From: Octopus sinensis
Lineage: Eukaryota
Direction: 5' to 3'
Assembly (NCBI RefSeq): GCF_006345805.1
Contig: NC_043010.1
Coordinates: 50,530,001-50,594,000 of the forward strand
DNA: 64,000 nucleotides
Below, piece by piece: positions 5,967-55,554 of this stretch. The position numbers and the translations under genes are program-made. A model generated the notes under the pieces. That model saw nothing but the letters and a program-made list of their open reading frames with translations. It did not search any database and had not been told where the DNA came from. Position 1 is the stretch's first letter, and each line of letters opens with the position of its first letter.

Positions 5967-5968
<2 letters not shown>

Positions 5969-6048
<80 letters not shown>

Positions 6049-6049
6049 A

Positions 6050-6132
<83 letters not shown>
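5969..6132. repeat. Long compound (TA)n microsatellite
   Basis: Seen directly; similar tracts occur throughout the window. Confidence 0.95.
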
Positions 6133-22366: not shown

Positions 22367-23446
22367 TTAGTTCGATTCAGTCAAAGAAAATGACACACTC
22401 TCACTGAATGTGACATGTGGGAAGTCAGCCTCATGTGTTTTTAAATGAGTTCTCAGCCTGCTGTTTGTCATGAACGTTTTCCCGCAAATGTCACAACAAA
22501 AATGTTTGTCATCTATGTGTATGCGATAATGTCTTTTCAAGTGAGCACTGTCACGAAACCCTTTACCACACATCTCACAGTAAAACGATTTCTCCCCCGT
22601 GTGAGTCTTAATATGTCTCCTTAGGTTATCATTACGTATGAAGTTTCTACCACATACGTCACAATGGAATGGTCTCTCTGTGGTGTGAATCTTTAAGTGC
22701 CTGTTTAACTGGCTGTTGGTAATAAAACCTTTCCAGCAGATTTTGCAATAAAAGGGTCTTTCCCCTGTATGGGTCCTGACATGAATTTTCAAATCTTCGT
22801 TTTTCAGAAAATCTTTGCCACAACTTTTACAATGGAAACATTTTATACCTGTGTGTATTCTTCGATGTTTTGACAAGTGACCCTTAGTTGCAAAATCTTT
22901 ATCACATATTTCACAGCTGAATGGCTTTTCCCCTGTGTGCTTTCTATGATGGATTTGTAATTTGCCCTTCGTGTCAAAACAGTGTCCACAGACATCACAA
23001 CTGTATGGTTTTCCTCCAGTATGGGCTTTAGCATGGCGTTTCAAGTTGTTAGCATCAGAAAAGGTTTGGCCACAAAACACACAATCAAATGGTCTCCCAC
23101 CTACGTGTATCTTTCTGTGTAAATTCAGTTTACGACTGTTACTAAACTCATGTCCACAAATTTCACAGCATAATTCTTTGAATTCGTCATGGACTTTTAA
23201 GTGTTGTTTCAAGTGGTTAATATCAGAGAATCTGTAATGGCAAATGTTACACAGGTAGCAGTTAAGTCTCGTATGAGTTACACTATGCTTTCTGATTTTA
23301 TTCTCAGTCAGGTATATTTTACCACATATCTCACAAGGGAACAAGTCTTGGGATTCAGAATTGGTTTGAGTAAAGTCATCATCAGACACATCACTGCATG
23401 AAGGAAGCAGTGTGACATTATTATCAGTGAGGAGCTCCATTTCCAT
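22367..23446 (-). CDS. C2H2 zinc-finger protein, 11 tandem fingers, single coding exon, 359 aa
   Basis: Eleven C-x2-C-x12-H-x3-H repeats with TGEKP-type linkers and a short acidic N-terminus; no KRAB or BTB domain seen. A strong acceptor (ctttatctttccag) at 23550 implies a spliced 5' UTR. Confidence 0.93.
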   Translation of the reverse strand: MEMELLTDNNVTLLPSCSDVSDDDFTQTNSESQDLFPCEICGKIYLTENKIRKHSVTHTRLNCYLCNICHYRFSDINHLKQHLKVHDEFKELCCEICGHEFSNSRKLNLHRKIHVGGRPFDCVFCGQTFSDANNLKRHAKAHTGGKPYSCDVCGHCFDTKGKLQIHHRKHTGEKPFSCEICDKDFATKGHLSKHRRIHTGIKCFHCKSCGKDFLKNEDLKIHVRTHTGERPFYCKICWKGFITNSQLNRHLKIHTTERPFHCDVCGRNFIRNDNLRRHIKTHTGEKSFYCEMCGKGFRDSAHLKRHYRIHIDDKHFCCDICGKTFMTNSRLRTHLKTHEADFPHVTFSESVSFSLTESN

Positions 23447-33384: not shown

Positions 33385-33621
33385 TCATGCTGAAGCTTCA
33401 CCCAGCAAACGTCTCTGTGCCAGTTCATTATTAGGATTCAACTCAATCAGTTCGTTGCTGGAGACAGCCAAATCTTGAACTGATACACGTCCTCTCTGTT
33501 GCATATACTTTGCTACGGACTGCAATTCATCTCTGGTGATGTAGATGAACTTTCCACGGTCATCCATGACTCCAGTCAAAGTGCCGTCACCAAGGAGACA
33601 CTGCACCCGATCAATTGCTTC
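33385..33621 (-). CDS. DDRGK1: DDRGK1 last coding exon (EAIDRVQ...[17 protein letters not shown]...RGRVSV...GEASA*)
   Basis: Acceptor ttctcag; DDRGK signature; stop at 33385. Confidence 0.97.
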
Positions 33622-36686: not shown

Positions 36687-39600
36687 GCATATACCGGAAC
36701 AGGACGTCACCAACAGTAAACAACATGAAATACGAAAACAAATGAGTTAAATATGCAAATAACAAGAGAAAAAAAGGACAAGTAATACAAAGGATGACCC
36801 TTCATTAGTAGTCAGCTGTCTATCTACTCTCCATTTTAAGCACGCCATCACAAGAATGCACAGGCAATGGCGCCTGTGAAAAGTGTTGGTAATGGTACCA
36901 TGTAAAAAGCACTGGTGATGGTGCCACATAGAAAGCACAAGTGATGGTGCTACATAAAAAGCACCCAGTACACTCTTTAAAGTGGTTGGTTGCAGGAAGT
37001 GCATCCAGTTGTAGAAACTATGCCAGAACAAACTATGAAGCCTGGTGTGGTCCCATGGCCTTACTAGCTCGTGTCAAACTGCCCAACCCATGCCAGTATG
37101 GAATATGGACATTAAATTATGTGTGTGTGTGTGTGTGTACCCTTGTCTCGACATCATGTGATGGTTGTAAATTAGCATCCCCACCATACAAGTGATGCTG
37201 TTCGTTTCTAGTCTTATGTGAAAAATGTCTGACCATGGAGGTATTTAACTTTGTTTGGAAGCAGGTGAAGGCAGGCAACAGAAAGGGCATCCATAGAAAA
37301 TCTATCTCAACAAATTCTGTCTGATCCATGCAAGCATGGAAAAGTAGACATAAAAATGATAATAACGATGATGATTACACACACATAGACATGAAAAATT
37401 AAAAAGCTTACGTCTAAATCTGTTGCTTTTTCTTCTTCTCCTTCTTCATCTATTGTAAACTCAGCTTTCATCTTCAAATATTCTTCATGTTCTCTTTTCT
37501 GTTCTTCTTCCTTTGCTTTCTGCTGAGCAAGTGCCTGAAAAATAATAAAAATGCTAATGATAATAATGGTTTCAAATTTTGGCACAAGGCTAGCAACTTC
37601 AGGGAAGGCGTTAAGTTCATTAAATTAACCACAGTGTACAACTGGTAACAACAACAATAATGATAATAATGGTTTCAAATTTTGGCACAAGGCTAGCAAC
37701 TTCAGGGAAGGCGTTAAGTTCATTAAATTAACCACAGTGTACAACTGGTAACAACAACAATAATGTTAATAATGGTTTCAAATTTTGGCACAAGGCCAGC
37801 AACTTCAGGGAAGGCGTTAAGTTCATTAAATTAACCACAGTGTACAACTGGTAACAACAATAATAATGATAATAATGGTTTCAAATTTTGGCATAGGGCA
37901 GTAATTTTAGTGGAAGGGGATCAATCAATAACACTGACACAAATTCTTGACTGGTACTTTATTTAATTGACCCTCAAAAAGATGAAAAGCAAAGTTCACC
38001 TTGCCAGCTCAAATGGTTTCCATTTTCAGCACATAACCAGCAATTTTCCAGGGAGGGGTTTAGTTGATGATGTCAGCCCAGTACTTGACTGATATTTAGT
38101 TTACCAACCCCTACAAGAGGATGAAAGGCATTGTTGACCCCAGCTCAAATGGTTTCAATTTTCAGCACATAACCAGCAATTTTCCAGGGAGGGGTTTAGT
38201 TGATGATGTCAGCCCAGTACTTGACTGATATTTAGTTTACCAACCCCTACAAGAGGATGAAAGGCATTGTTGACCCCAGCTCAAATGGTTTCAATTTTCA
38301 GCACATAACCAGCAATTTTCCAGGGAGGGGTTTAGTTGATGATGTCAGCCCAGTACTTGACTGATATTTAGTTTACCAACCCCTACAAGAGGATGAAAGG
38401 CATAGTTTTGATCCCAGTGGAATTTGAACTCAGAACGTAGAGAGCCTGAACAAATACTGCAAGGTATATTTTTCCAATGATCTATGGATTCTGCCGGTTC
38501 ATATCCTTAACAATAATAATTCTTTCTTTCTAATTTTGGCACAAAGCTAGCAATTTTAAAAGAGAAAGTATGTTGATTACTTAATCCCCAGATGCCATGC
38601 AGACAATTTGGTATGGCTGACTGGGCATTCATCTTGTTTTGGCCACTATACTTTTTAGCACTGAAACAAATACACGTGCATACACACACATACGTGTGCA
38701 CAAAAGTATACACATAGATAGAAAGAGTAAGAGAGGTAGGGAAAGACATTACAGTTTATCAAATGAACTTGGTTGATATAAATAATTTCCCTCACCCCCA
38801 AAATATAAAGGGAGATAACTTGCACTCCATCAGTTATGTGACGTGGTCAGTCCTTTGAATTACTTGTTTTTGCCAGCTTAGTAGACTGGAACAACACGAA
38901 ATAAAGCATTTCAATCAAGAACATAACTGCTGGGAACTGAGATCATGACCTTACAATTCTGAGCCTGATACACTAATCACAAAGCCATGTACCGATTGTG
39001 CCACAGGGGCAGCTACTTATGCATACCTTTCCTTCTTGGGACACAAAACTCTGCTTGCGAAGACCTGTTGAGGTAAGTGAAATCAGAATCAAAATTGCTC
39101 AAAAATCAATGGAAATTGTAGTTGTGATACCAGTGCTGGTGGCACGTAAAAGAACCATCCGAACGTGGCCGTTGCCAGCGCAGCCCCGACTGGCCTCCGT
39201 GCCGGTGGCACGTAGAAGTCACCAACTGATTGTGGCCGTTGCCAGCTTCGCCTAGCACGTAAAAAGCACCCACTACACTCATGGAGTGGTTGGCGTTAGG
39301 AAGGGTATCCAGCTGTAGAAACACTGCCAGATCAGACTGGGCCTGGTGCAGCCTCCTGGCATCCCAGACCCCAGTCAAACCGTCCAACCCATGCTAGCAT
39401 GGAAAGCAGACGTTAAACGATGACGATGATGTACCCACACATAGAGAAAATATACTCACACACATAAACAGAGAAGGAACTAGGGAGAGAACGGAAAAAA
39501 ACATTAAAACACCTGATGTCAAATAAGTAGGCATAGAACTGGTGATGCCAAAATGCCTGTGCCAAAACTTCTCCAGGCCTTGTGATCAAACAGCCAGACT

Positions 39601-42345
39601 GTCTTAAAATCTGATAATTTCAGAACATGCCATATCAATATTAATATCCTTTTCTACTCTAGGCACAAAGCCCGAAATTTTATGGGGGGGGGGGCAGTCG
39701 ATTATATTGACCCCAGTATGCAACTGGTACTTAATTTATTGACCCTGAAAGGATGAAAGGCAAAGTTGGCCTCAGCGGATTTTGAACTTAGAACGTAAAG
39801 ACAGACGAAATACTGCTAAGCATTTTACCTGGCATGCTAATGTTTCTGCTAGCTCACCGACTTATATCGATATTAATATAGAAACTTACCATTTCAGCTT
39901 CTTCTCGTTCCCGTTTTTTCTCCTCTTCTTTCTTTTTCGCCTCCTCAGCAGCTAACCGCTCCCTTTTCTCCTCACGTTCTATCTCCATTTGCTGTAAAAA
40001 TGTAAACCATCAATAGAATATAAACCAATATGCCACAGACAGTAAAGCAATTGCAAGAGTTAAATGACTAGATCAAAAAACACAAACTAGTAGGATTAGA
40101 TTGTCAACGGTCATCTCTACTAGCAGACAATTTAACAAGGAGTACACACATCCTTATATACAAATATATATCGTTATTTACATTAGACGGATATTTATCC
40201 TCATCTTGTTCTTAACCCTTTAGTATTTAAACCGGCCATATCCGGCCAAAATAGTTAATCTGTTTTATGTTCAAACAAACCAGATTCAGGCTCTCACACC
40301 TACCCTACAATGTTATTCTACATTAAGTAATTACACCATCAAGATCTTGAAGATATGAGATAATGCATGATTAATTCAAATTAATGGGAATCAATAGGCA
40401 TTATGTTTGATTGAATAATCAGAATACTAAAGGGTTAAATACCCAATTTTTATTTTGCTTTCAGTCCAAACTTTACCTCTCTCATTGCTTTTTTCTCTGC
40501 CTTTTCCTGTAGTTTACGCATCTTCTTGGCACCAATCTTGCCTTCAGGCATGGCAATGTTGTCGAAAATACTTTCTTCATTATCCGAAAAACTTTGTTCC
40601 TCTCCTCTTCCCACATTAACAGGTGCATCATCATCTGCAAGAAAGATTGATTACAATGAGTTAGATTCTAAACATCAAGCTATGCCTTCTATTCTCCACA
40701 ACCTAACAACTACTTTTCTTTTGAATTTTTTCCACTATTTAGTCCAGGAGTTCTCAACTATTTTATTCTGGTGGACCCCACCAGAGCCATTCAATGTTTA
40801 AAAACTAGTTTTATAGAAATGTCTTTCCAAATTCCTATTTTGTTTTTCACACATTAACTTGTGTAAGCTGAACTATATAAAATATTAGAGAAAGAAACTT
40901 AACTGTTTCTTGCAATACATACATCTAAAGTATAATTTTTTTAGGGGCCCTTAAAATACTATTTTGTTGCATGGACCCCAAAAATCTTATTTGGACCCTG
41001 GCTGAAAACCACTGATTTAGTCAGAGAGACAAGGTCGTTGCCTGTGATCCTTTATTCTACATGGCTTCCAAGACAGATAGGAAAGGAGGAAATGATCCTC
41101 AAATCAGAGAGCTAGGCCAAATGCTTGCAACAGAATGAAGGCAATTAAAAGCATCTAAGGACCATGTTGTGGTGTTAAACAGAGTGACGGATACAAGTCT
41201 TCCACCACCCAAGAACTCAAAATACAAAGAGCTCAGACAGCTTCCACATGACATCTCAAACATTCTAACAATCACATCAATCGTCACCAACCATGAAAGG
41301 CAGGATTTGATCTCAGAGTGTAGAGACACAGAACAAAAACAGTATGTCCTTATGTCCGACATTCAGCCACTTTGTTGCAAGAGAGAGAAGAACTGAACTG
41401 ATTTAGGTTCAAGAGTGTTAAAATATTCTTCATAAGATGCAAGCATGGTTATATGGTTAGGAAGCTTGCTTTGCAATCATATGGTTTTGGGTTCAGTCCT
41501 CACTGCAAGGAATCTCAAGCATCTCCTACAAAAGTTACATGTAGGCCAATGCTTTCTGAATGAATTTGGTAAACAGAAACTGAGTGAAAGTCTGTCATAT
41601 AACATACATTTTATATATGCATGTGTGTGTGTGTGTATATATATATATATAGATGAGTGTATTTTACCTTGTTAACAATTAACACGGAAAAAATAAATAA
41701 ATAGTTACCAGGGCAGCAAAAATCTCACAAGTAAAGGTGTTGTAACTCCTTGTTTATAAAGGTAGAAACTTCGTGTTAACGTTGAATATTTTGAATAATA
41801 TATGAATAAATAAATGGAGTTTAATGCAGGTGTAATCAAATATTTTTACTTTCGACACGTTTCGAAAATTCCACTGATACCATCGGTATCTACATATCAA
41901 ATTTGAGCGCAATTGGATGGAGGGTTTCCGAGATCCTAGAAGCCACACACACAGACAGACAGAACTGTTTATATATATATATATACGAGCAAAACGCACC
42001 CTCCCCATGTCCAATGGACGATGCTGAGTTGTCAAACATTTAAACCAAATTTTCTCAAAACAACTTGTCCGGCAGTCCCATAGGCCTCCCCTTTGAGAAA
42101 CACTGATTTAACCTAAATTTGAGACACCAGCAAAAGAAGAAACAAAAATAGACTTTTTTCTATTCAAAAGAAAAACGATTCCCCATGGCTTTATTGATCA
42201 CATTCTCACTTGGAAACGATTTTTGTAATTTTTATAAGACATCTACATGCCCTGAGACCGTCGGTATCTACATATCAGATTTGAGTGCAATCGGATGGAG
42301 GGTTTCCAAGATCCTAGAAGCTGCACACACACACACAGAACTGAT

Positions 42346-44745: not shown

Positions 44746-45496
44746 GACATGTTTATTTCAGTTTCCATCTACCAAATCCACTCAAAAGGCTTTGATCAGC
44801 CTGAAGCTATAGTAGGAGACAGTTGCCTATGGTGTCATGCAGAGGGACTGCACCCCTAGAACGATGTGGTTGGGTCATTAGCTTCTCACCACATGGCCAC
44901 ACCTGCACCTATGCAAGCTCCTTCAGAAAGACTTTCGGCATTCCGTCGATATAACTCGACAAAATTAAAACATTTCACTTCAGATATTTCCGTGGAAGCA
45001 AATTTGCGGATTTTACATACACACACGAAACAGGTAAGAACAAATATACAAGACTTTTTTCCTCAAGTTTAAATAAAATGAGACATTGCTGGCATAATTT
45101 CGTTATATCTATACTCCACAACCACGGAAAATACCCGAAGTAAAATGTTATGATTTTGTCGAGTTATATCGAAGGAATGCCGAAAGACTGTGAAATCATC
45201 AGGTTTACAAAATTAACTAAAATATTAATGAATCACGAGATATTAAACGTTGTTCAATCGAATAGTAACACAAATAAACAAATATCAACATATGTGTATG
45301 GTGCAACATATGTTTACCTGTGACGGAACATCTTACCTCTAACTGGTTGCAGTGGCTCGCTAGAGCTGAACCATCGGTTAATGAGAGTGAGTATCAAGAT
45401 AGTTAACAGCAATAACCCAACTAATACAAGGTAAACCGTCTCTCGGGGCCAAATCGACTGCTTATTGCCGGTGAAACTCTGACCGTGGTCAGCCAT
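33385..45496 (-). CDS. DDRGK1: DDRGK domain-containing protein 1 (UFBP1), 8 coding exons, 981 nt, 326 aa
   Basis: Exons 45337-45496, 43477-43581, 40477-40634, 39890-39991, 37412-37534, 35813-35851, 34297-34353 and 33385-33621 all have GT/AG sites and join in one open frame. The product has an N-terminal TM anchor, KIGAKK...KLQEK, a charged coiled coil and a PCI-like C-terminus with the literal [13 protein letters not shown] signature. Confidence 0.96.
34297..34353 (-). CDS. DDRGK1: DDRGK1 coding exon 7 ([19 protein letters not shown]), 57 nt; absent from the ORF track
   Basis: Acceptor atttcag, donor gtaggg; conserved KVV.LEDLA..F..KTQ. Confidence 0.93.
34516..34845. mobile_element. hAT-type MITE (DDRGK1 intron 6)
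   Basis: GGTTCTCAACC ... GTTGAGAACCCTG termini; same family as 40745. Confidence 0.75.
35813..35851 (-). CDS. DDRGK1: DDRGK1 coding exon 6 ([13 protein letters not shown]), 39 nt
   Basis: Acceptor cttacag, donor gtaag; conserved LL.EFINYIK. Confidence 0.93.
37412..37534 (-). CDS. DDRGK1: DDRGK1 coding exon 5 ([32 protein letters not shown]...)
   Basis: Acceptor ttttcag, donor gtaag; conserved [14 protein letters not shown] motif. Confidence 0.95.
37556..37895. repeat. 103-bp unit x3.3 tandem repeat next to the exon 5 acceptor
   Basis: Unit starts at 37561, 37664, 37767 and 37870; near-identical. Confidence 0.95.
38005..38402. repeat. 136-bp unit x3 tandem repeat
   Basis: Unit starts at 38005, 38141 and 38277; near-identical, SINE-B-tail-like. 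Confidence 0.95.
39890..39991 (-). CDS. DDRGK1: DDRGK1 coding exon 4 ([34 protein letters not shown])
   Basis: Acceptor tttacag, donor gtaag, 102 nt, phase 0; coiled coil. Confidence 0.92.
40216..40434. mobile_element. piggyBac-type MITE (DDRGK1 intron 3)
   Basis: TTAA-CCCTTTAGTATT ... AATACTAAAGGG-TTAA. Confidence 0.88.
40477..40634 (-). CDS. DDRGK1: DDRGK1 coding exon 3 (DDAPVNV...[23 protein letters not shown])
   Basis: Acceptor cttgcag, donor gtaaag; conserved KIGAKK motif. Confidence 0.92.
40745..41014. mobile_element. hAT-type MITE with perfect 8-bp TSD
   Basis: TSD atttagtc on both sides; CAGGAGTTCTCAAC ... GCTGAAAACCACTG. Confidence 0.88.
41860..42350 (-). mobile_element. Non-autonomous Helitron-like element in partial head-to-tail tandem; plus-strand copy at 59800-60180
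   Basis: 5' TC..TATATAAAA..CTGTCTGTCTG start and GC-rich 3' end finishing CTCGT; no TIR or TSD. Class is inference. Confidence 0.55.
42737..42942. mobile_element. Penelope-like terminal remnant with a 119-bp fold-back (42824-42942) and minimal hammerhead-like motif
   Basis: 59-bp arms with 1 mismatch; the arm reads C(C/G)GACGA-ACGGCAACGG-GAAA-CTCAGAG-TA-ACAG; flanked by (TA)n. Confidence 0.55.
43477..43581 (-). CDS. DDRGK1: DDRGK1 coding exon 2 ([34 protein letters not shown])
   Basis: Acceptor tatttgaag, donor G|gtaag, 105 nt, phase 1-1; basic linker as expected. Confidence 0.8.
44923..45193. mobile_element. MITE with about 70-bp TIRs in DDRGK1 intron 1
   Basis: ctttcggcattcc.tcgatataactcgacaaaat / attttgtcgagttatatcgaaggaatgccgaaag. 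Confidence 0.75.
45337..45496 (-). CDS. DDRGK1: DDRGK1 coding exon 1 (MADHGQ...[23 protein letters not shown]...PVR), TM anchor
   Basis: ATG at 45496, hydrophobic helix, donor G|gtaag; phase 1 matches exon 2. Confidence 0.85.
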
Positions 45497-45801
45497 CTTT
45501 AAATCGTGGCGACACAATTGAGTAGGTCGAAAACTGGAATGGATAAACGGAACGAATGATTATATTTATTGACAAACGAAAAACGGAAATGAATGTTACG
45601 CTCACAATATATTTCACATCATATGGTGATAACCTTATTATATGAATATTTTTAGACTTTATCAACATATGTATAAAATATTTTAAAATATATAAACATT
45701 ATACAGAAATAGTAATATTAGTTTTGGTTATGTTTTACGTTTCTTGGGGTTTCCAAGTTAGATAATTCCTACGACCATCAAGCAAACAAGAACCTCTACG
45801 T
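45497..45801. promoter_or_regulatory. DDRGK1 promoter/5' UTR, candidate bidirectional promoter
   Basis: Repeat-free, CpG-retaining interval between divergent ATGs 528 bp apart. Position-based inference. Confidence 0.55.
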
Positions 45802-47374
45802 CAGTGGTTCTCAACCAATTTTTAATAATGGAACCTTCTGATTACTATTTTATTGTAGTGGAGCCATCTGATGTTTAAAAAACTATCCTCTGTGTGAAAA
45901 GTCTGGCTGCATACACGTTAGCATATGTCAGGTGCATACAACTGACAACACAGTTAATTAAGATTTATTCAGTGAGTTCTATTCAACACATATTTACAAT
46001 CAGCAGAATCATTATTAACTTTAGATGGCTCGCAGGCGAGGTGAACAAATTGGTGAGAGAGATAGACTGGCAATACTTCTACGCTACCAGCAAATTAAAG
46101 ATGGGGTCGCAAATGAAACAGTGAGTGATCTTTGCAATGCCTTTCAAGTAGACCGCAATATACCAGCGCGAATTTATAAAAATGCAACTCTTCATGGAAC
46201 AATACAGCCAAAACAGCGTTCTGGGCGACCAAGCCTTGTCAAAAATGCTGCTTTGCAAGAAAGAATGGTCAATGCTATTCGTGAAAGGCGTACTGCAACC
46301 AGTAGACAACTTGGTAGAGAATTGGGATGCTCTAACAGTACAGCAAACATAATGAGGCATATTCTAAAATTTTGTGCTCAAGGCCGTGTGAGTAGACCTC
46401 CTTTATCTGCCCTAAACATGGAAAAACGTTTGCAGTTTTGTCAGGAACATCCAAATGTTAGACCACATACAGGTTTCTTAGATGAAAAATGGTGGCATAC
46501 ATTTTGGGGTAGCAAGAAGATTTACAGACGGTCAACATCACCGCATATTTATGAACACCCACCATGTCATGTTCCTAAAGCTATGTTTATCGCTGTGATT
46601 AGCAGAGACGTGCCTGGTGGAAAAGTTGGCTTTTGGCCAGTTGCTGAACAAAGACAATACGTACGGAACTCTCGATATCATCAACGCGGTGATCCTTATT
46701 GGAGTGATTCAAGCTGCGATGGTGCTTTTTTCTGCCGTACACTGGATGTTGATATTTTACCAGCCTGTGAAGAACATGGGATCCGCATATTGCAAATGGA
46801 CAATGCGAGACCACATATTGTCAACAATTTGGATGCTTCTATTGCCGAAGTAATGGCTCGTCACCCGACAGTGCAACTTTTATTGCAACCGCCCCAAAGC
46901 TCGGATTTAAATCCATTAGAGGAAGGCATTTTCAAAGTTTTGGTCGATAAAGTTGAACTGAAAAACCCTACAACGCGGCATGAATTGCACGAAGCCGTCT
47001 TGCAGTCTTGGGAAGAGCTATCTGAGCGGAAAATTCGTGGATGTATTCAACATCAAACTCGTGTTCGGCGTCAAATAGTTGACTGTCGTGGGGGTAACAG
47101 ATTCGTGTAATAAATTTTGTGTTTATTTTTGTTTCATAATATATTTTGTTTTTCATATGTGTAGTTTGAGCTATACAAAAATTTGAAAATTAGCTTTTTC
47201 TTGCAATAAATACATCTAAATCTAGACTTTTTCCTTAGCCTTTAAAATAAGACTGTTTACTATTTTGTTTACATGGACCCCAAAAAATCCTGTATGAAAT
47301 AGATAGAGAAGAAAGAAAATCATAGTGATGGTGCCTGGTTTTATTTTCATACGGATCCTGGTTGAGAAGCACTG
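45802..47374 (+). mobile_element. hAT (Charlie-like) MITE shell enclosing the transposase ORF
   Basis: TIRs CAGTGGTTCTCAACCA / TGGTTGAGAAGCACTG match 15/16; 8-bp flanks ctctacgt / ctttatgt. Both halves align to the simple MITE copies at 34516 and 40745. Confidence 0.8.
46025..47110 (+). CDS. Intact IS630/Tc1/mariner-superfamily transposase-like protein, DD39E catalytic spacing, 361 aa
   Basis: N-terminal HTH region with SGRP, then FLDEKWW, KAMFIAVISR, GKVGFWP, QMDNARPH, QPPQSSDLNPLE and a GGN C-terminus. There are 39 residues between the second D and the E. No stops or frameshifts; AATAAA overlaps the stop. Confidence 0.92.
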   Translation: MARRRGEQIGERDRLAILLRYQQIKDGVANETVSDLCNAFQVDRNIPARIYKNATLHGTIQPKQRSGRPSLVKNAALQERMVNAIRERRTATSRQLGRELGCSNSTANIMRHILKFCAQGRVSRPPLSALNMEKRLQFCQEHPNVRPHTGFLDEKWWHTFWGSKKIYRRSTSPHIYEHPPCHVPKAMFIAVISRDVPGGKVGFWPVAEQRQYVRNSRYHQRGDPYWSDSSCDGAFFCRTLDVDILPACEEHGIRILQMDNARPHIVNNLDASIAEVMARHPTVQLLLQPPQSSDLNPLEEGIFKVLVDKVELKNPTTRHELHEAVLQSWEELSERKIRGCIQHQTRVRRQIVDCRGGNRFV

Positions 47375-50322
47375 CTTTATGTGGTCTTTGGATCTGTTAG
47401 AAACAACGACCAAAACTCCTTTAAATGTCACTCCTTATATATATATATATATAATGTGATTCTACTAACTTCTAAGTTCAGTGTTGATCTGGGACAAAAA
47501 CGATTCTGATGTCCAGTTATTTCTTTTACAGGGTTTAGAAAAACTGAAGGACTGCTGCAATAAACGTGTGAACCTGAGAGAGGAATATGTTGAATAAAAT
47601 CATAGTTAACTGATCCTTCTGTATGTTTTTTTTTTTTTTTAACTCAAATCCAGGAACTTTCCAACACCCCTTCATAAAGATATTGTTCACAAAGGAAAAT
47701 TACCAACTAGTTCAGTGCTAGAGATGAAAATAATATATGATTTTAGGTTCTGTCATAGCGGAAAGATCGCTAGCAAATGATTTAGCATACATGTTGATAA
47801 CACCAGTGCCAACATATTTAATGCAGTGAACAAACAAATTTTAATTGAAGGAAATTAGTCACAAGAAAACATTAGTATAATTCAGATTAAAAACCAAAAC
47901 TTCAAGGAGAAACAATTATGGTATGCAAAGTAAAACAAAAATGTTAATTAATTCAGTGGGAAGGTGTTTTATCTTGACAGTATGGTGACAATGATTCTAT
48001 TTTTAATTTCAATGGAGTAAGCTAAATCACCAACCAAATAATTTTATTCTATTGTTTATCTAAAAGATTGTATTTTTAATTTAAATTAAGTATGCTAATC
48101 ACCAACCTCGTCATTTTATTCAATTTTTCAATGAATTTAAATGAACTTCACTGTAATTTTAAATAAAGTATGTCAATACCAATCTAACAATTTTAATTCA
48201 TTTTTAATTTATTTAAATCACGTATGTTAATCACTGACCTTACCATTTGATTTTCAAGCAGAGCATATTGTCAGGTATTTTACCTACGTCTTATCTTAAA
48301 ATTTCCTAGCAGTGCCTTCTGTCTACCAGAACCATTCACAAAGCTTTGGTTGATCTGGGACTATAGTGAAAGACACGTGCCCAAAGTAGTATGCAATGGG
48401 ACTGAACCTGGAACCTTGTGGTTTGGAAACAAACTTCTAAACCACATTTCTTACTAAGAACAATGTGGGAGAAAACTCTGGAATCTAGAAATTGCTTAAG
48501 AATTGAATGGAGATGTAGAGTGGAGAGTGAATCTAATCCCCAGTATGGTAGCAATGGCAGACATGTTTCTGTTTTATTAGATATCTGCAGCAAAGCATAA
48601 TCAAAGAATACAGATTGACTAGAATCAAAGTTTACATTGTTTTTCAAATGTAAAATTCAAATTCAAAGTTCAATTTCCACTGAGGTTGACTTAGCCTTTT
48701 AGCCTTTTGGAATCAATGAAATAAATACCAGTTGCAAATTGGAATTGATATAATCAACTATCCCTTCCCTCAAAATTTCAGACTTTTTGCCTTTAACAGA
48801 AGGGATTAACATTATTGAAAGGATATTGATTAATGTTGATTAGTTTCTACAACTGACATCACCGTGACCGACCAGGTTATCAGATGTTGCTACACATCGC
48901 CGGTCACAATGCGCTTCGCATTGTTTTAGCCTTCAAATGACGCCACCCCGCTGGCTAAGTGAGCAGGCCAACAGAAGAAAGAGTGAGAGAAAGTTGTGGC
49001 GAAAGAGTACAGCAGGGATCGCCACCACCCCCTGCCGAAGCCTTGTGGAGCTTTAGGTGTTTTCGCTCAATAAACACGGTCTGGGAATCAAAACTGCGAT
49101 CCTACAACCGTGAATCCGCTGCCCTAACCACTGGGCCATTGCGCCTCCACAACTGACATAAAATGTATTATTATTAAGGTGACTGCTGGTAGAACTGTTA
49201 GCACGCCAGGCAAAATGCTTAGCAGCATTTCATCTGTCTTTACGTTCTGAGTTCAAATTCCACCGAGGTTGACTTTGCTTTTCATTCTTTTGGGGTTGAT
49301 AAAATAAGTACCAGTTGAGCACTAGGGTTGATGTAACCGACTAGTCCCCTCCCCACAAATTTCAGGCCTTGTGCCTTTAGTAGAAAGGGTTATTATTATT
49401 ATTAACCAGAATTGTTAGCATGCTAGACAAAATGCTTTACTGTATTTTGTTCCATCTCAGTTCAAATCCCGCTGAAGTTGACTTTGCATTTGGGGTTGAT
49501 AAAGTACCAGCTGAACACTGGGGTTAATGTAATCGATTTACCCCTACCCCACCTGAAATTGCTGGTCTTGTGCCAAACTTTGAAACTGCTATTAATATTA
49601 TCATAGCAGTGAGCTGGTAGAACTGTTAGCGCACCAGGCAAAATGTTTAGTGACATTTTGTCTATCTTTACATTCTGAGTTCAAATTCTGTCAAGGCTGA
49701 ATTTGTTTTTCATCCTTTTGGAGTCAATAAAATAAGTACCAGTTGAGCACTGGGGTCAATGAAATGAATATCAGTTGAACATTGAGGCCAATATATATTT
49801 ACACACACACATGCACATATGTATGAGTATGTGTATGTCTTTGTTTGGCCTCCTACCACCCTGTGCTTAACTACAGCTGTTGGTTTGTTTACTTCCCTTT
49901 AACTCAGTGGTTCAGCAGAAAAAAAACCAATAGAATAAGTATCTGACTTTACAAAAAAATAAGCAGTGGAATCAATCTATTTGACTAATAACCCTTCAAA
50001 GTGGTGCTCCAGCATGGCTGTAGTTCAATAACTGAAACGGATAAAAAAATAAAATGATACCTTTCTTCACAAACTGTTTCAAATCATCTGTCCCCTATTC
50101 TGCTATATTTCCCTCCTATCTTTCTTTCTGCAACTTACTTGATCTAATCCACTTCCTCCAAATCATAAACATTAAACCTGTATCTTCTCTTCTCATCACT
50201 GTCACTAGCATTGAAGCTAGAATCACTCACTAAAACACAATCTTATCTTCATCAGAATTGCATTTCTTTAGAAGTTATTTCCTGTCCGAGTATTTTCCTT
50301 CCCTTTCAGCAACTTCATTTTA

Positions 50323-50844
50323 GGCAGATCTTTACCTTTTGACTGACAGATTTAAAAAATAATTTTTTGTAACTAAACACTTTAAAACTTTGGACACTGG
50401 AAGAATGTCATATAAAACATGTTTTACTCTTAGCATTTTTGAGAAAAACTTATATAGTTAGCCTAAAAGGATCTTTACCTTTTGACCTACAGATTTAAAA
50501 AATTATTTTTTGTAACTAAATACTTTCAAACTTCAGACACTGGTAGAATGTGTCATATGAAACATACTCTTAACATTTTTGAGAAAAACTTATATTTACA
50601 AAGTTATTTCACATTAAAGTTCTCATATTTTGGTAATTTCAACCAATCAATGACGTGTATTCAGCTGAATAAAATTACTGCTGTTGTTTGTCAAGAAGAA
50701 CTTCTGGCAGTGTATATTTCGTTTGTCACTGTTATTTATGACAACCCTAACCCTAAAACCCTAACTGTAACCCTAAAACCTTAAAACCAGTACAAACGCA
50801 CAAATGATGTCATAAATAACAGTGACAAACGAAAAATACACCAT
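50323..50844. mobile_element. MITE remnant related to the 8861 family with about 145-bp internal duplication, plus mini-MITE 50710-50844 carrying CCCTAA repeats
   Basis: GATCTTTACCTTTTGAC start is duplicated; TIR GTGTAT.TTTCGTTTGTCACTGTTATTTATGAC. Confidence 0.6.
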
Positions 50845-51074
50845 GCTCCAGCATGGCTGTAGTTAAGTGACTGAAACAAATAAGAGGGTAACTAGTTAGT
50901 TGTCTTACAAATCATCATTTATTAATTACTAACAAGGACACATTATTTCATTTTGCAACCATAAAATATATACATGTATACATACATACATACACACATA
51001 GTAGACATATACACATATATATGAGTTGAATGCGAGAATTCATCATCATCATATATACAGTCAGGCATACGTAA

Positions 51075-51427
51075 ATAATGTGGACCGCATCCCCTTTTGT
51101 TATTTATTTATTTATTTATTTTACAGAAAGCCCCATTTTTGAATACAGAGATTCTGATTCTGCAAAAATAAAAATAAAAAACGGCATTTAAAAATTTTTA
51201 TTTTTTCCCCACCCCCACCACTGCCAAATTCTTCAATTTGACTGTAAAAAAGAATTTCTGTAAAAAGTGAAAATTGAAGAATTTGGTGGTGGTGGTGGGG
51301 AGGCGATTAAAATTTTTAAAAGCTATTTAAAAAATTTTTTTTTGCCGAATCAGAATCTCGAAAATGGGAAATTCTTTAAAAAAAAAAAAAAAAATAACTA
51401 AAGTGGGTGTGGTCCACATTCTTTACC
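51075..51427. mobile_element. Imperfectly palindromic MITE
   Basis: aatgtggacc / ggtccacatt termini and ccaaattcttcaattt / aaattgaagaatttgg inner arms. Confidence 0.6.
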
Positions 51428-51718
51428 TCTGTCCATACGCATACACACACGCACACATATATGTGTGTGTGCCTATATACATGCCAACAATACCTGTGCA
51501 AAATTTTAAGTTTGATAAGGCTTGCATGATACCTCATAGTTTCTCTCCACCCTATGACATGATCGAGTCAAACTGAGATAAGTTATCTAGTGCCAATATG
51601 AGTCACAAGCTCAGGACTATAGCAGTGCCAAGATATCAAAACACCAAGAAAAACATCACCATAATGTTCAATGCCATTCCATGCATATCTGGTTTTACAT
51701 CAGTGATCTACATTTTCT

Positions 51719-52485
51719 GGAAAGACTTCTGCTCATTCCCCCCCCCCCACCACCACCACCCATTTTCTCCCAAATTTGTTTATTTAAAAAATTTTTTTTG
51801 CCAAAAATCCCCGTTTTCGGATACGGAGATTCCGGAAAATTGCCAAAAATTGGCATTGTGAAAATTTTTCTCCTCCTTTACCCGCCAACTTCTTCAATTT
51901 TGACATTTTTCTGCAACACTAACCTTAAAACCCTAACCCTAACACCCTAAAACCCTAACCCTAAAACCTTAACCCTAAAACCTTAACCCTAAAACCTTAA
52001 CCTTAAAACCTTAACCCTAAAACCCTAACCCTAAAACCCTAAAACCTTAACCCTAAAACCCTAACCCTAAAACCCTAAAACCGTAACCCTAAAACCCTAA
52101 CCCTAACCCTAACCCTAACCCTAAAACCCTAACCATAAGTACAGAAATGTTCTGGAATTTTTGTCCGAATCCTGATGTCTGTATTTTTCTGCATGCTTAG
52201 AAAAGAAAAAATTCTTAAAAAAAATTTTACAAAGATTTTTGGAAATTTTTTTCAGAATCATAATCTTCATATTTTTCCGCATATTTTGAGGGGAAAAATT
52301 CTGAAAAAGTTTTAAATGAAGGAAATGGGGGTGGGGTGGTGCTGGTAATTTAGAAATGTCAATTTTTGCCAATTTTTTTGCAGATTCATATTCCTTGTAG
52401 CTGAAAAAAAAGGGGCAGGGATGGGTGTTGTAAAAAAGAAAAAAGTTTTAAAAAAGAGTGGTTTTTCGGGGACAGAAGTCTTGCC
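51719..52485. mobile_element. GG...CC MITE with 8-bp TSD hosting the telomere-like array
   Basis: GG.AAGACTTCTG termini; perfect TSD cattttct at 51711-51718 and 52486-52493. Confidence 0.8.
51919..52134. repeat. Interstitial telomere-like array (CCCTAA, CCTTAA and CCCTAAAA variants)
   Basis: About 216 bp, seen directly. Confidence 0.95.
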
Positions 52486-52799
52486 CATTTTCTTCTTCTT
52501 CTGACAGATATATGTATGTATATACGTATAAAAACAACTGTATGTGTGTGTGTGTGCATATACACATAGTGTCATTTAATCATCCATAAAAGCATTTTCC
52601 AGGCTGTTTGCTATTCAATAAACTGAGGATATTATTATCTTACTCAAAATCAAATGAAGATTGATGACAAGAAGTGCATCAAGCAGTAGAAAATTTTGAT
52701 TCAACAAAGTTTTGTCACATTGAGCCCTTGAGCAAGGCATTTCATTTCATTTTAGTTGACTCAGCTGAAAATTAGTACTAACCTAAATTTGGTGCTGTG

Positions 52800-53300
52800 G
52801 AGGCGGGTAGCTTAGTGGTTAGGGTGTCAGAACCATGATCGTAAGATTGTGGCTTCGATTCTTGGACCGGGCAACGCATTGTGTTCTTTAGCAAAACACT
52901 TCATTTCACATTGCTCCAGTCCACTCAGCTGGCAAAAATGAGTAACGCTGCGATGGACTGGTGTCCCGTCCAGCTGGGGAACACATACGCCATAGAAACC
53001 AGCAAACCGGGCCCATGAGCCTGGCTAGGCTTTAAAAGGGCATGTTTATTTTGTGGATGCACGTGGCTTAGTGGTTAGGGTGTCAGCACCATGATTGTAA
53101 GATTGTGGTTTTGATTCCTGGACCGGGCAACGCATTGCGTTCTTGAGCAAAACACTTCATTTCACGTTGCTCCAGTCCACTTAGCTGGCAACAATGAGTA
53201 ATGCTGCAATGGACTGGTGTCCCGTCCAGCTGGGGAACACATACGCTATGGTAACCGGGAAACCGGGCCCATGAGCCTGGCTAGGCTTTAAAAGGGCGCA
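52800..53300 (+). mobile_element. Two tandem copies of a tRNA-headed SINE (about 250 bp each)
   Basis: GCTTAGTGGTTAGGGTGTCAG...GGCTTTAAAAGGG repeated at about 52805 and 53062. Confidence 0.85.
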
Positions 53301-55199
53301 TTTATTTTTATTAAATTTGGTGCAGCCCTTCTGCTATTATTTTAGAGAGTTGAGACAGTTTCTCTGTTCTTGACTACATAGGCACTTAAAATAGTTAGAA
53401 AAAAAAAACATGAATGGGGTGGGGCTAATTTTTTGAAAATATTTTTCGGATTCCTAAGTTTTAGATGTCAGAGATTACAAATATGTAAAAAAAATTTATC
53501 CCTGTCTGTTTATTCATAAAATATATGTCAACTAAATGTAGCAGTCCTATAAAAAATGGTGTTGCTGTTGTTTTTAGCCCCAGGAAAATATATCTATCTC
53601 TTCATACAAATATCTATATGCTTACTCTTTTACTTGTTTCAGTCATTTGACTGTGGCCATGCTGGAGCACTGCCTTTAGTCGAGCAAATCGACACTAGGA
53701 CTTATTCTTTGTAAGCCTAGTACTTATTCTATCGGTCTCTTTTTGCCGAACCACTAAGTTACAGGGACTTAAACACACCAGCATTGGTTGTCAAGGGATG
53801 TTGGGGGGACAAACACACACACACACAAACACACACATTTTCCGTCAACCAAATCCACTCACAAGGCTTTGGTCGGCACGAGGCTATAGCAGAAGACACT
53901 TGCCCAAGGTGCCATGAAATTTTCTTCAAATACTTTTCAGGGCGTGTAAATTACGATTATATTGCTATTTAATAAGTAAATGAAAATAAGAGCCCACACC
54001 CACATACATACTGAAACACATCACAATTTTTTTCGAAATTTCAAGTTTCCTTTTGTAGATCTATACGATGTGCGTCAGTAAATATGTGCACAAATACACC
54101 AATTTTGTTTTTCATATTAAATTCCGATATAATTGTAATCTATACGTTCTGAAATGTATTTAAAGAAAATTAAACCTTTTTTTTTTTCTAAAAGATATGA
54201 GGAAACAAATTCGATTCGTGTGAATTTTTTTTAATTCCTCTCCCCACTCATGGAATTAAAAAAATTTTTTTTTTTCACAATTTCTCATTCAATAAATAAT
54301 TGAAGTCTACACTGTATGAAGCATATTTATTCAACATTTCATAAAAAAAAATATCCATTTTTCTGGAAGTTTTGAAGCAATAATAAGGATCAATCAGTGG
54401 TAGAGGGGGCATACATGTGGAGGTATGCCTATTATCTAACGTGTCCTTACCGTATTTAACACAGTTGGGAGCAGTTTGAGAGAGATTTGGCTATTATTTT
54501 TAGCATGTCGAACGATCGAGTAGAGTTATTCGCTCTAACTTGGCAGTTAAACTTAGCAGACATAAGGCGCACACAAAAGGCTAATATAACCCTATAAAGG
54601 TATCCAGGATGTGAATGGAATTAAAATAGAAAAAGAAAACAATAAGTACACGAACAACAACTAAAAACTTTGTATAAAAGTTTTTATTTATTTATTTTTG
54701 AGGATGAGTAAAAGAAACGAAAAAGATAAAGGAAAAGAACTATTAATAGTTACACTACACTTGAATATTACGAGAACCAACGAGGATACATCTATGTCTT
54801 CGTTCGACCTGCTAGAAATAACAGTCATATCTTACTCAAATCATACCTATGACTTCGAGTCACATTAGACGATGTAGTCTTAGGATTAACTTTCAGGATA
54901 AATAATGCGCTAATCATAACTAGAACGTCTTTGATAAGTCTACACGACCCACTGCCAACTTGGGGTTAAATATCTTCAGTCCTAAAATAATAAATACGAA
55001 ACTGCTATTTTATTCTGATAAACTATTATTCTTTACTGAAATAAGAAAGAATATACATATATAATTATATATATATGTAAAAAATCAAATCGATCTAATA
55101 ATATTTTAGATTTTAGACGAACAGAAAACGAACACCTAGAATGTTAAAAGGCATAAGAACAGATTGATACAATTCTGTTGAACTGCTATTCTTAGAACC

Positions 55200-55554
55200 G
55201 GTTCAGCCGACGACAATACGCACCATTTTTGACTCAAACCTGACGATGGTAGAGGTAAAGGTTGGCTGTCAGTGACAGCTCCTCTCGGCAATAGATGTCA
55301 TAATTACTTCACATTTACGTCACAAACTGACAATTATCTCTCCTTCTAGTATACACTACACTGAGTGAAAGTACGAAGATACTTTCCAGTGTAATAAACG
55401 TCGTCCGACTTGTTCGAATTTGTTGTTGTTTCTGCTCTAATTAATGTCATGGAGACGACTTAATTATTCGACTACGTGTACCCCAATCATTTCCTGTACT
55501 CATATCGTTGTCTTCTACTGATCTCTTCAGACACAGACATATACACATGGCTCG
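55200..55554 (+). promoter_or_regulatory. Candidate promoter and first exon of an unidentified plus-strand gene
   Basis: CpG-retaining unique DNA, CRE-like TTACGTCA near 55315, ending ATGGCTCG|gtaagt. No downstream coding exon could be joined. Confidence 0.4.

What the first reader, a model, noticed from the sequence alone, without database searches (positions are those of the whole stretch)
46025..47110. Intact DD39E mariner-type transposase with no TIRs of its own: candidate domesticated gene
Seen: an uninterrupted 361-aa ORF with the triad LDEKW / QMDNARPH / SSDLNPLE and 39 residues between the second D and the E. Every other long TE ORF in the window is broken, and the enclosing TIR/TSD already carry mismatches. 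No inverted match exists between the about 135 bp upstream and the about 30 bp downstream of the ORF. Established: KVMF..VARP, GKIG.WP and QPPNSPD.N.LD motifs with 39-aa spacing mark the DD39D (plant mariner / Guest) lineage, whose third residue is D. Inference: a DD39D-lineage protein with a D-to-E switch (and SPDL to SSDL), kept open by selection after losing mobility.
Basis: partly seen in the sequence, partly recalled or inferred. Interest (0 to 1): 0.85.

Follow-up and report, generated by a model that had tools for sequence, protein, structure and literature searches.

The report
Immobilised, decaying DD39D-type mariner copy
This is an ordinary, fairly young copy of a mariner-type jumping gene in the octopus genome that lost one of its two ends and cannot move, and its reading frame is most likely still open by chance rather than because the octopus uses it.

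Summary
The 361-aa ORF (46025..47110, +) is real and intact, with D153, D259 and E299 and 39 residues between D259 and E299. The claim of "no TIRs of its own" is half wrong. A 26-nt left TIR with its TA (45884..45911) matches the TIRs of related elements. The right TIR was removed by a ~62-bp deletion that also took the TA and ~28 bp of the MITE-like host element.

The window is Octopus sinensis. The element lies ~390 bp upstream of the true DDRGK1 start codon, head-to-head with it.

All close relatives and ~100 distant ones have D as the third catalytic residue, so E299 is a private GAT>GAG change on a DD39D background.

Domestication is not supported:
- At least two more damaged paralogous copies exist in O. 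vulgaris.
- A 5'-truncated, plainly dead paralogue is just as open over 283 codons.
- The orthologous O. vulgaris copy has the same insertion and deletion but two frameshifts.
- Argonauta hians keeps the CD39-DDRGK1 synteny with no transposase.
- Changes specific to this copy's lineage hit family-conserved residues.

One weak contrary signal remains: the orthologues differ by 7 synonymous and 5 non-synonymous changes (one-sided p~0.03). Verdict: an ordinary relic of low interest.

The parts
45802..45885 (+). Left part of the MITE-like host element. Its outer TIR CAGTGGTTCTCAACCA is at 45802..45817. It ends in the TA target site used by the mariner (45884..45885).
   Evidence: Other copies of the host element at ~34516..34900 and ~40700..41014 read AAAAACTA|GTTTTATAGAAA across the empty site.
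45886..45911 (+). The mariner's own left terminal inverted repeat, TCCTCTGTGTGAAAAGTCTGGCTGCA, directly preceded by TA.
   Evidence: It is homologous to the TA-flanked TIRs of L002, L003, L004 and L005.
45912..46024 (+). 5' untranslated part of the element.
   Evidence: It is partly shared with paralogue L008 (45943..45998).
46025..47110 (+). Intact 361-aa transposase ORF. The HTH_Tnp_Tc3_2 match covers aa 80-143 (46262..46453). Key codons: D153 at 46481..46483, D259 at 46799..46801, S293 (TCG) at 46901..46903, E299 (GAG) at 46919..46921.
47111..47147 (+). Remnant of the 3' untranslated part. It ends in the deletion junction, a TATTTT microhomology at 47142..47147. The ~32 bp that should follow, including the 26-nt right TIR, are missing, as are the TA and ~28 bp of the host element.
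   Evidence: comparison with L001, L008 and the host copies. One search finds no right TIR in the window. One search shows the same junction in O. vulgaris.
47142..47374 (+). Right part of the MITE-like host element. Its outer TIR (reverse complement CAGTGCTTCTCAACCA) is at 47359..47374.
45337..45496 (-). True first coding exon of DDRGK1 (ATG at 45496). It is head-to-head with the transposase ORF, with the two start codons 528 bp apart.
   Evidence: The reconstructed 326-aa protein is identical to O. vulgaris CAI9733143.1.

Best explanation
This is a one-ended, immobile relic of a compact (~1.3-1.6 kb) Tc1/mariner element of DD39D type in Octopus sinensis.

Inferred history:
1. The element inserted by cut-and-paste at a TA inside a MITE-like element. 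The site is ~390 bp upstream of the DDRGK1 start codon, in the opposite orientation.
2. A ~62-bp deletion between TATTTT microhomologies then removed its right TIR, the right TA and ~28 bp of the host element, so the copy can no longer be excised.
3. Before the O. sinensis / O. vulgaris split the copy acquired replacements at family-conserved positions: R161W, A196V, R227S, A307V and the third catalytic residue D299E.
4. After the split O. sinensis added L229S and P293S (SPD to SSD). O. vulgaris acquired two frameshifts.

The ORF is still open in O. sinensis because the copy is young, about 1.7% from its common ancestor with paralogue L001. This is not evidence that the host needs it. If translated, the protein would keep its HTH DNA-binding half. 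By analogy with Mos1, where a third-residue D-to-E change abolishes activity, it is probably catalytically dead.

Shown here: the anatomy, the orthology, the paralogues and the substitution pattern. Inferred: neutrality, loss of catalysis and the dating.
For: Anatomy:
- ORF and triad.
- Left TIR plus TA, homologous to the TIRs of relatives that have both ends and TA duplications.
- The host element's empty site and the missing 28 bp.
- Paralogues retain the inner right TIR exactly where the window copy breaks off.

Source and context:
- The window is O. sinensis CM016872.1.
- The DDRGK1 CDS was reconstructed and matches database proteins exactly.

Not single copy:
- L001 on O. vulgaris OX597822.1 is 96.5% identical over 895 bp and is 5'-truncated by a SINE-like repeat.
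- L008 on OX597825.1 is internally deleted.

Orthologue (L009, O. vulgaris OX597827.1):
- It is colinear at ~97% identity, with the same insertion and the same deletion junction.
- It has a 1-bp deletion at the equivalent of 46542 and a 1-bp insertion near 47090. The first stop comes after 190 codons.

Outgroup:
- Argonauta hians keeps CD39(-) and DDRGK1(+) only 1.2 kb apart, with no transposase hit.

Catalytic residue:
- E299 is private to this locus. All family members, including paralogue L001, have D.
- A third-residue D-to-E change abolishes Mos1 activity (Lohe 1997, PMC19784, as cited in PMC9632168).

Control for openness:
- The dead paralogue L001 has no stop or indel over 283 codons, and it contributes as many non-synonymous differences as the window copy (8 against 7).

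Ascertainment:
- O. vulgaris has 1,553 Tc1-Mariner insertions that are <=2% from their consensus and >=90% full length (PMC13282606).
- My rough estimate is a ~5% chance that any one copy of this age stays open. It uses a nonsense fraction of 0.045 and an indel:substitution ratio of 0.14.
Against: - Between the two orthologues the ORF shows 12 substitutions in 1085 sites (1.1%). The flanking and locus-wide non-coding rate is 2.6-2.8%.
- Seven of the 12 changes are synonymous and 8 of the 12 fall at third codon positions. One-sided p is 0.033 and 0.023 against a mutation-spectrum-weighted neutral expectation. This is the pattern purifying selection would give, with omega about 0.2-0.3.
- The O. 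vulgaris assembly was built from ONT R9.4.1 reads with Illumina polishing (PMC10700109). One frameshift lies in a G5/G6 run, so assembly error is not fully excluded.

Counterpoints:
- 6 of 206 non-ORF windows of the same size are equally little diverged.
- The low-divergence zone (45129..46864) also covers DDRGK1 exon 1 and its upstream region.
- The exact two-sided 95% interval for 7/12 (0.28-0.85) still contains the neutral value of 0.29.
Confidence: 0.84

Rival explanations
1. Young, lineage-restricted domestication. After losing its right end, the ORF was kept by selection in the O. sinensis/O. vulgaris lineage as a host protein, for example a DNA-binding factor. It could be transcribed divergently from the DDRGK1 promoter region.
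For: - The copy is immobile.
- The ORF is intact in O. sinensis.
- It is present at the orthologous site in O. vulgaris.
- Orthologues show 5 N: 7 S, with 8 of 12 changes at third positions (p ~0.02-0.03), and 2.4-fold lower divergence than the flanks.
- It sits head-to-head with DDRGK1, 528 bp between start codons.
- RefSeq calls a gene here, LOC118766002.
Against: - The O. vulgaris orthologue has two frameshifts.
- The ORF is absent in Argonauta although the flanking synteny is kept.
- Paralogous copies exist.
- Lineage-specific replacements hit family-invariant residues: R161W, L229S, P293S, D299E and A307V.
- The dead paralogue L001 is equally open and shows the same N:S ratio.
- The RefSeq model needs a non-canonical 570-nt intron.
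- Neither the full-length product nor any O. vulgaris version of it is in the 15-billion-protein collection.
- The low divergence extends beyond the ORF into the DDRGK1 promoter and exon 1.
Confidence: 0.06
2. The ORF still encodes a working transposase. Its own copy is stuck, but it could mobilise other family copies or derived MITEs in trans.
For: - The reading frame is complete, with both HTH regions and all three acidic positions occupied.
- Close relatives elsewhere have perfect TIRs and TA duplications, so the family was recently active in some hosts.
Against: - E replaces the D that is invariant in ~110 relatives, and the same change abolishes Mos1 activity.
- The adjacent SPD motif is SSD, and four other conserved positions are replaced.
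- The only other Octopus copies found are truncated or internally deleted, with damaged right TIRs.
Confidence: 0.04
3. The DNA, rather than the protein, has been co-opted. The insertion would supply promoter or first-exon sequence to the neighbouring genes DDRGK1 and/or the CD39-family gene.
For: - The O. vulgaris CD39 gene model (769 aa, against 740 aa in O. sinensis) starts inside the mariner ORF on the same strand, at about the Met187 equivalent.
- RefSeq DDRGK1 XP_036364912.1 has an upstream 23-nt exon at 48266 spliced across the element.
- The element lies ~390 bp from the DDRGK1 ATG, in a zone of low divergence.
Against: - This rests on gene models only. No transcript data could be examined.
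- The 20-aa DDRGK1 extension and the CD39 extension are absent from the other species' models, so they may be prediction artefacts.
- Argonauta runs both genes without the insert.
Confidence: 0.1

Closest known systems
DD39D family of Tc1/mariner (plant mariner-like elements, 'PlantMar', also called Guest/GT)
   Same: - In the family to which this copy belongs, the acidic triad has 39 residues between the second and third residue, and the third residue is D.
- It shares the KxMF..AV, GK(V/I)G.WP and QPPxSPD.N.LD-type motifs with many DDxD relatives.
- It uses a TA target site and short TIRs. The TIR start (TCCTCTG / CCCGCTG) resembles the CTCCC start reported for GT (PMC8472432).
   Different: - This copy has E, not D, at the third position.
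- The host is a cephalopod, whereas DD39D is described as mainly a plant family (PMC7325037, PMC9777934).
- The elements are much shorter (1.3-1.6 kb and 361-365 aa, against 2-6 kb for PlantMar).
- By HMMER score the nearest non-family relatives are a mixed DD37-42D set (P0012, P0015, P0022-P0025). Sequences carrying the QPPNSPDLNVLDLGFF form of the motif, which I recognise as plant-like from my own knowledge and could not label from the unnamed library, score lower at ~60-70 bits.
- No phylogeny with named references was possible.
Mos1 / mariner DD34D transposase and its third-residue D-to-E mutant
   Same: - It belongs to the same superfamily and has the same DDD logic.
- A third-residue D-to-E change is reported to abolish Mos1 activity (Lohe et al. 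1997, cited in PMC9632168). That is the basis for predicting that E299 is inactivating.
   Different: - The spacing is 39, not 34.
- There is no significant sequence hit to Mos1 in the PDB. The only hit is the Sleeping Beauty catalytic domain at E = 0.009.
- The effect of D-to-E was not tested for this family.
Domesticated Tc1/mariner or pogo transposase genes (e.g. SETMAR; Drosophila CG14478)
   Same: It is an immobilised transposase ORF next to host genes. CG14478 also carries E at the third position of a mariner-derived triad (PMC13548663).
   Different: - Those genes are single-copy, syntenic and intact across many species, and are under demonstrable purifying selection.
- Here the only orthologue available is frameshifted, an outgroup lacks the ORF, paralogues exist, and the selection signal is marginal.

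Membership tests
Tc1/mariner superfamily | N-terminal paired HTH DNA-binding region plus a C-terminal DDE/D catalytic domain | tested here: met
   Pfam HTH_Tnp_Tc3_2 scores 31.6 bits against a cutoff of 31.5. DDE_3 is weak (E = 5.5e-4). The catalytic motif aligns to SB100X. 769 HMMER relatives were found.
Tc1/mariner superfamily | TA target-site duplication and short terminal inverted repeats | tested here: inconclusive
   The left TA and the 26-nt left TIR are present (45884..45911). The right TIR and right TA are deleted in this copy. Both ends with TA are present in relative L002.
DD39D (PlantMar / Guest) | 39 residues between the second and third catalytic residues | tested here: met
   D259 to E299 has 39 residues between them. 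All close relatives also have a spacing of 39.
DD39D (PlantMar / Guest) | The third catalytic residue is D | tested here: not met
   This copy has E299 (GAG). Paralogue L001 and all family members have D (GAT), so the family meets the feature and this copy does not.
DD39D (PlantMar / Guest) | Phylogenetic clustering with named DD39D reference transposases | not testable with these tools
   The library holds no named reference sequences. The best non-family HMMER hits have mixed spacings of 37-42.
DD39D (PlantMar / Guest) | TIR beginning CTCCC (as stated for GT in PMC8472432) | tested here: inconclusive
   The window TIR starts TCCTCTG and relatives start CCCGCTG. These are similar to CTCCC but not identical.
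Domesticated transposase gene | Loss of mobility (TIRs lost) | tested here: met
   The right TIR is deleted. The same junction is present in O. vulgaris.
Domesticated transposase gene | Single copy in the genome | tested here: not met
   At least two further copies at 95-96.5% identity lie on other O. vulgaris chromosomes (L001, L008). The full copy number in O. sinensis could not be counted.
Domesticated transposase gene | Intact syntenic orthologues in other species | tested here: not met
   The O. vulgaris orthologue is present but has two frameshifts. In Argonauta hians the synteny is kept but the ORF is absent. No O. bimaculoides DDRGK1 protein appeared among the listed hits, so its locus could not be fetched.
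Domesticated transposase gene | dN/dS well below 1 between orthologues | tested here: inconclusive
   There are 5 N: 7 S changes, giving omega about 0.2-0.3 and a one-sided p of 0.033. The two-sided 95% interval includes neutrality. Against paralogue L001 omega is 0.42, with the dead copy contributing equally.
Domesticated transposase gene | Expression as a host transcript or protein | not testable with these tools
   The only evidence is a RefSeq model (XP_036364913.1, 171 aa) that needs a non-canonical intron. The exact 361-aa product is not in the protein collection.

The most novel reading that the evidence does not exclude
A very young co-option, a few million years old and restricted to Octopus. 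After the right TIR was deleted, the ORF came under purifying selection in the O. sinensis/O. vulgaris lineage as a catalytically altered DD39E protein, expressed divergently from the DDRGK1 promoter region. On this reading the two O. vulgaris frameshifts would be nanopore-assembly errors or a secondary loss.
Probability: 0.06. Interest if true: 0.5.

Novelty: new member of a known kind. Interest (0 to 1): 0.15.

Why it matters
As it stands this matters little. It is one more decaying DNA-transposon copy in a genome that holds more than 1,500 young, near-full-length Tc1/mariner insertions.

Two modest points are useful:
- A compact DD39D-type mariner family exists in a cephalopod. Its relatives (TA plus 26-28-nt TIRs, 361-365 aa) are rare in public protein data: only 9 of 1.84 billion representatives reach E < 1e-30. 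This widens the known host range of a spacing class regarded as mainly plant-borne.
- The case shows that an intact ORF plus a missing TIR is not evidence of domestication. A clearly dead paralogue of the same age is just as open.

If the weak synonymous excess proved real, it would be a snapshot of the earliest stage of transposase co-option.

Tried and rejected
- **Enclosing TIRs as the mariner's own ends.** I first suspected that CAGTGGTTCTCAACCA (45802 and 47374) were the mariner's own TIRs. I rejected this because other copies of that MITE-like element, without the mariner, exist in the window, and because relatives carry a different TIR that matches 45886..45911.
- **Right TIR elsewhere in the window.** None was found within 3 mismatches.
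- **Exact look-up of the 361-aa product.** It is not on record in the contig index or the protein collection.
- **Independent check of the O. vulgaris frameshifts.** I made an exact look-up of O. vulgaris versions of the product: with both frameshifts removed, with only the first one removed, the 190-aa product as assembled, and the 171-aa frame starting at the Met187 equivalent. None is in the collection, so the test was uninformative.
- **Searching with the DDRGK1 last exon.** This returned no cephalopod proteins. I got round it by reconstructing the whole CDS and using an exact cluster look-up.
- **O. bimaculoides orthologous locus.** No DDRGK1 protein from that species appeared among the listed hits.
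- **PDB sequence search for Mos1.** The only hit was marginal, to Sleeping Beauty.
- **The RefSeq 171-aa model as evidence of splicing or expression.** Rejected, because all four possible intron placements are non-canonical.
- **A 'DD39E' class in the literature.** The term occurs in no paper of the library.
- **Low ORF divergence as proof of constraint.** Weakened, because equally low windows occur in a DDRGK1 intron and the low zone extends over DDRGK1 exon 1 and its upstream region.
Full report
**1. The observation**

The ORF at 46025..47110 (+) is real: 361 codons from ATG to stop. There are 105 residues between D153 and D259 and 39 residues between D259 and E299. Pfam gives HTH_Tnp_Tc3_2 at its cutoff and a weak DDE_3 match. 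In the one PDB hit, 'qssdlnple' aligns with the 'QSPDLNPIE' motif of Sleeping Beauty SB100X, so E299 sits at the catalytic third position. An open frame of this length in 38% G+C DNA, with homologues at E = 1e-100 to 1e-180, is not a chance feature.

**2. The ends**

- Relatives recovered from public assemblies are complete small elements. L002 (67% aa identity) has TA|CCCGCTGTGTAAAAAGTCTGTGTGCA on the left and its inverted copy followed by TA on the right. L003, L004 and L005 carry the same type of end.
- The window has the homologous sequence TA|TCCTCTGTGTGAAAAGTCTGGCTGCA at 45884..45911, 114 bp before the ATG. That is the element's own left TIR with its TA.
- The reverse complement of this TIR is nowhere else in the window within three mismatches, so the right TIR is truly gone.
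- The 'enclosing' repeat (CAGTGGTTCTCAACCA at 45802..45817 and inverted at 47359..47374) belongs to a separate MITE-like element. That element has other copies at ~34516 and ~40700..41014.
- Aligning those copies shows the empty site AAAAACTA|GTTTTATAGAAA. The mariner entered at that TA. On the right, the host element resumes at TATTTTGTTTTTCA (about 47142) and lacks ~28 bp of its own sequence.
- Two O. vulgaris paralogues continue past the break with ...TTTTTCGG(G/A)TGCAGCCAG..., the inner part of the right TIR.

I conclude that a single deletion of about 62 bp, between TATTTT microhomologies, removed the last ~32 bp of the element, the right TA and ~28 bp of the host. The copy is one-ended and cannot be excised by the normal two-end reaction. 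That last step is an inference from the known Tc1/mariner mechanism.

**3. Where it is**

An annotated 171-aa model (P0009 = XP_036364913.1, LOC118766002) places the window on Octopus sinensis CM016872.1, where window position = record position - 50,530,000. That model removes 570 nt from the ORF, and no placement of the removed stretch gives canonical splice sites. I treat it as an artefact.

I reconstructed DDRGK1 on the minus strand in eight exons (45496..45337 through 33621..33385). The 326-aa product is identical to O. vulgaris CAI9733143.1. RefSeq XP_036364912.1 (346 aa) adds 20 residues from a 23-nt exon at 48266.

The mariner therefore lies ~390 bp upstream of the true DDRGK1 ATG, head-to-head with it, with the two start codons 528 bp apart. 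A CD39-family gene starts ~8.4 kb further on (55547).

**4. What family**

- Close relatives are few: eight proteins in the 5.8-billion set, and nine below E = 1e-30 among 1.84 billion representatives.
- Every one that covers the motif reads SPDxxPLD (one fragment, P0018, has SSDLNPFD), with a spacing of 39.
- Of ~110 relatives with a recognisable motif, all those with a spacing of 35 or more and a D-type motif have D as the third residue. The spacing ranges from 35 to 58, and 39 is the commonest value (34 cases).
- Only eight low-scoring Tc1-like hits have E, and their spacings are 32-35. The window is the single 39+E case.
- The paralogue L001 reads CCG GAT ... GAT where the window reads TCG GAT ... 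GAG.

E299 is therefore a point mutation in this copy and not a lineage. 'DD39E' occurs in no paper of the library.

Assignment to the named DD39D/PlantMar/Guest family is plausible on spacing, motifs and a similar TIR start. It is untested by phylogeny. The best non-family hits have mixed spacings of 37-42, and sequences carrying the QPPNSPDLNVLDLGFF form of the motif, which I recognise as plant-like from my own knowledge, score lower. The literature regards DD39D as mainly plant-borne, with some records in bees (PMC7325037, PMC9777934, PMC8472432).

**5. Tests of domestication**

(a) Copy number.
- O. vulgaris has at least two more copies on other chromosomes.
- L001 (OX597822.1) is 96.5% identical over 895 bp and is cut at codon 78 by a SINE-like repeat.
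- L008 (OX597825.1) is 95-96% identical, has an internal deletion (45998 to 46910) and a truncated right TIR.

(b) Orthologous site.
- The O. vulgaris DDRGK1 locus (L009, OX597827.1) is colinear with the window at ~97% identity. It contains the same insertion with the same right-end junction, so the insertion and the deletion predate the species split.
- There the ORF has a 1-bp deletion (CACCGC to CAC-GC, equivalent to 46542) and a 1-bp insertion in a G run near 47090. The frame from the ATG stops after 190 codons.
- Paralogue L001 agrees with O. sinensis at both positions, so both indels are derived in O. vulgaris.
- The O. vulgaris assembly is ONT R9.4.1 polished with Illumina (PMC10700109). 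Error is possible, especially in the G run. However, DDRGK1's 981 coding bases show no indel.

(c) Outgroup.
- Argonauta hians keeps CD39(-) and DDRGK1(+) only 1.2 kb apart. tBLASTn finds no transposase anywhere in 25 kb.

(d) Substitutions between the orthologues.
- The ORF shows 12 substitutions in 1085 sites (1.1%), against 2.6% in the immediate flanks and 2.8% locus-wide.
- Five are non-synonymous (G10S, M110I, S229L, E250K, S293P) and seven are synonymous. Eight of the twelve are at third codon positions.
- With the flank mutation spectrum the neutral expectation is 29% synonymous. This gives one-sided p = 0.033 (synonymous) and 0.023 (third position).
- This is the one result that leans towards constraint. 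It is weak. The two-sided 95% interval for 7/12 includes 0.29. Six of 206 non-ORF windows are equally little diverged. The low-divergence zone runs from 45129 to 46864, over DDRGK1 exon 1 and its upstream region.

(e) Direction of change.
- Polarising with L001 and the family alignment, the lineage leading to the window acquired R161W, A196V, R227S, D299E and A307V before the species split. It acquired L229S and P293S afterwards.
- Five of these seven (R161W, L229S, P293S, D299E, A307V) hit positions conserved across the family.
- The dead copy L001 acquired about as many replacements (8). Window against L001 gives 17 N: 11 S and omega 0.42, which is therefore not specific to the window copy.

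(f) Control for openness.
- L001 is certainly non-functional, yet it has no stop and no indel over 283 codons.
- My estimate uses about 18 substitutions since the common ancestor, a nonsense fraction of 0.045 and an indel:substitution ratio of 0.14. It gives roughly a 5% chance that a copy of this age stays fully open.
- O. vulgaris alone has 1,553 Tc1-Mariner insertions within 2% of their consensus and at least 90% full length (PMC13282606).

**6. Mechanism and verdict**

Most likely (about 0.84) this is a neutral relic. A DD39D-type mariner landed in a MITE upstream of DDRGK1 and lost its right end. It has since drifted, staying open in O. sinensis and frameshifted in O. vulgaris.

Using the calibration in PMC13282606 (a JC distance of 0.09 is about 25 My), the copy would be roughly 5 My old and the species split roughly 4 My old. 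These dates are rough inferences.

If translated, the protein keeps its HTH half. It carries E at the third metal-binding position, a change reported to abolish Mos1 activity (Lohe 1997, cited in PMC9632168), next to an altered SPD motif. I predict no catalysis. This was not tested.

The rival readings are:
- young domestication (0.06);
- a still-active trans-acting transposase (0.04);
- co-option of the DNA as promoter or first exon for the neighbouring genes (0.10). This last reading rests only on gene models: the O. vulgaris CD39 model starts at the Met187 equivalent inside the ORF, and RefSeq DDRGK1 has an exon spliced across the element.

**7. Novelty**

This is a new member of a known kind. 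The small 361-365-aa DD39D-type family in a cephalopod is a minor addition to the catalogue. 'DD39E' is not a class. Interest is low (0.15). The most novel reading that the evidence does not exclude is a few-million-year-old co-option (probability about 0.06).

Noticed in passing
L009 ~8378..9466 (O. vulgaris orthologue of window 46025..47110); window ~46583: The O. vulgaris CD39-family gene model is 769 aa, against 740 aa in O. sinensis and 692 aa in Argonauta. It starts at L009 8909, which is inside the mariner ORF on the same strand, at about the Met187 codon. This suggests a chimeric or read-through first exon derived from the transposase, or a prediction artefact.
   Followed up: partly
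window 48244..48266 (-) and 45497..45533 (-): RefSeq DDRGK1 XP_036364912.1 (346 aa) has a 20-aa N-terminal extension. It comes from a 23-nt exon at 48266 spliced across the mariner to an acceptor 37 nt upstream of the real ATG. The 326-aa form starting at 45496 is identical to the O. vulgaris protein and has the expected N-terminal membrane anchor.
   Followed up: yes
window 46289..46861: RefSeq LOC118766002 (XP_036364913.1, 171 aa) is the transposase ORF with 570 nt removed as an 'intron'. None of the four possible placements has GT-AG or GC-AG ends, so it is probably an annotation artefact.
   Followed up: yes
window 22367..23446 (-); L009 32121..33200: An intact single-exon 359-aa ORF made of tandem C2H2 zinc fingers lies downstream of DDRGK1. 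A 359-aa gene is annotated at the corresponding place in O. vulgaris.
   Followed up: partly
window 45802..47374, ~34516..34900, ~40700..41014; weaker matches at 290 and 1119: A MITE-like repeat family with terminal CAGTGGTTCTCAACCA inverted repeats has several copies in the window. One of them is the host of the mariner insertion.
   Followed up: partly
window 38141..39480 (DDRGK1 intron): This intronic stretch is as little diverged between O. sinensis and O. vulgaris (10-11 substitutions per 1085 bp) as the transposase ORF, against a median of 24. It may be a conserved non-coding element or a local low-mutation region.
   Followed up: no
L010 8816..10001 versus window 45496..55547: The CD39-DDRGK1 intergenic interval is 1.2 kb in Argonauta hians and about 10 kb in Octopus sinensis. 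The difference is largely repeat insertions.
   Followed up: no
L001 ~5897..6070: In paralogue L001 the right TIR is interrupted by a ~170-bp near-perfect palindrome (CTGCTCTGATATGACACG ... CGTGTCATATCAGAGCAG). It looks like a hairpin-type MITE insertion.
   Followed up: no
window 16055..16894 (+): A 279-aa open frame that looks, by eye, like the C-terminal part of a LINE reverse transcriptase. It was not scanned against any profile library.
   Followed up: no
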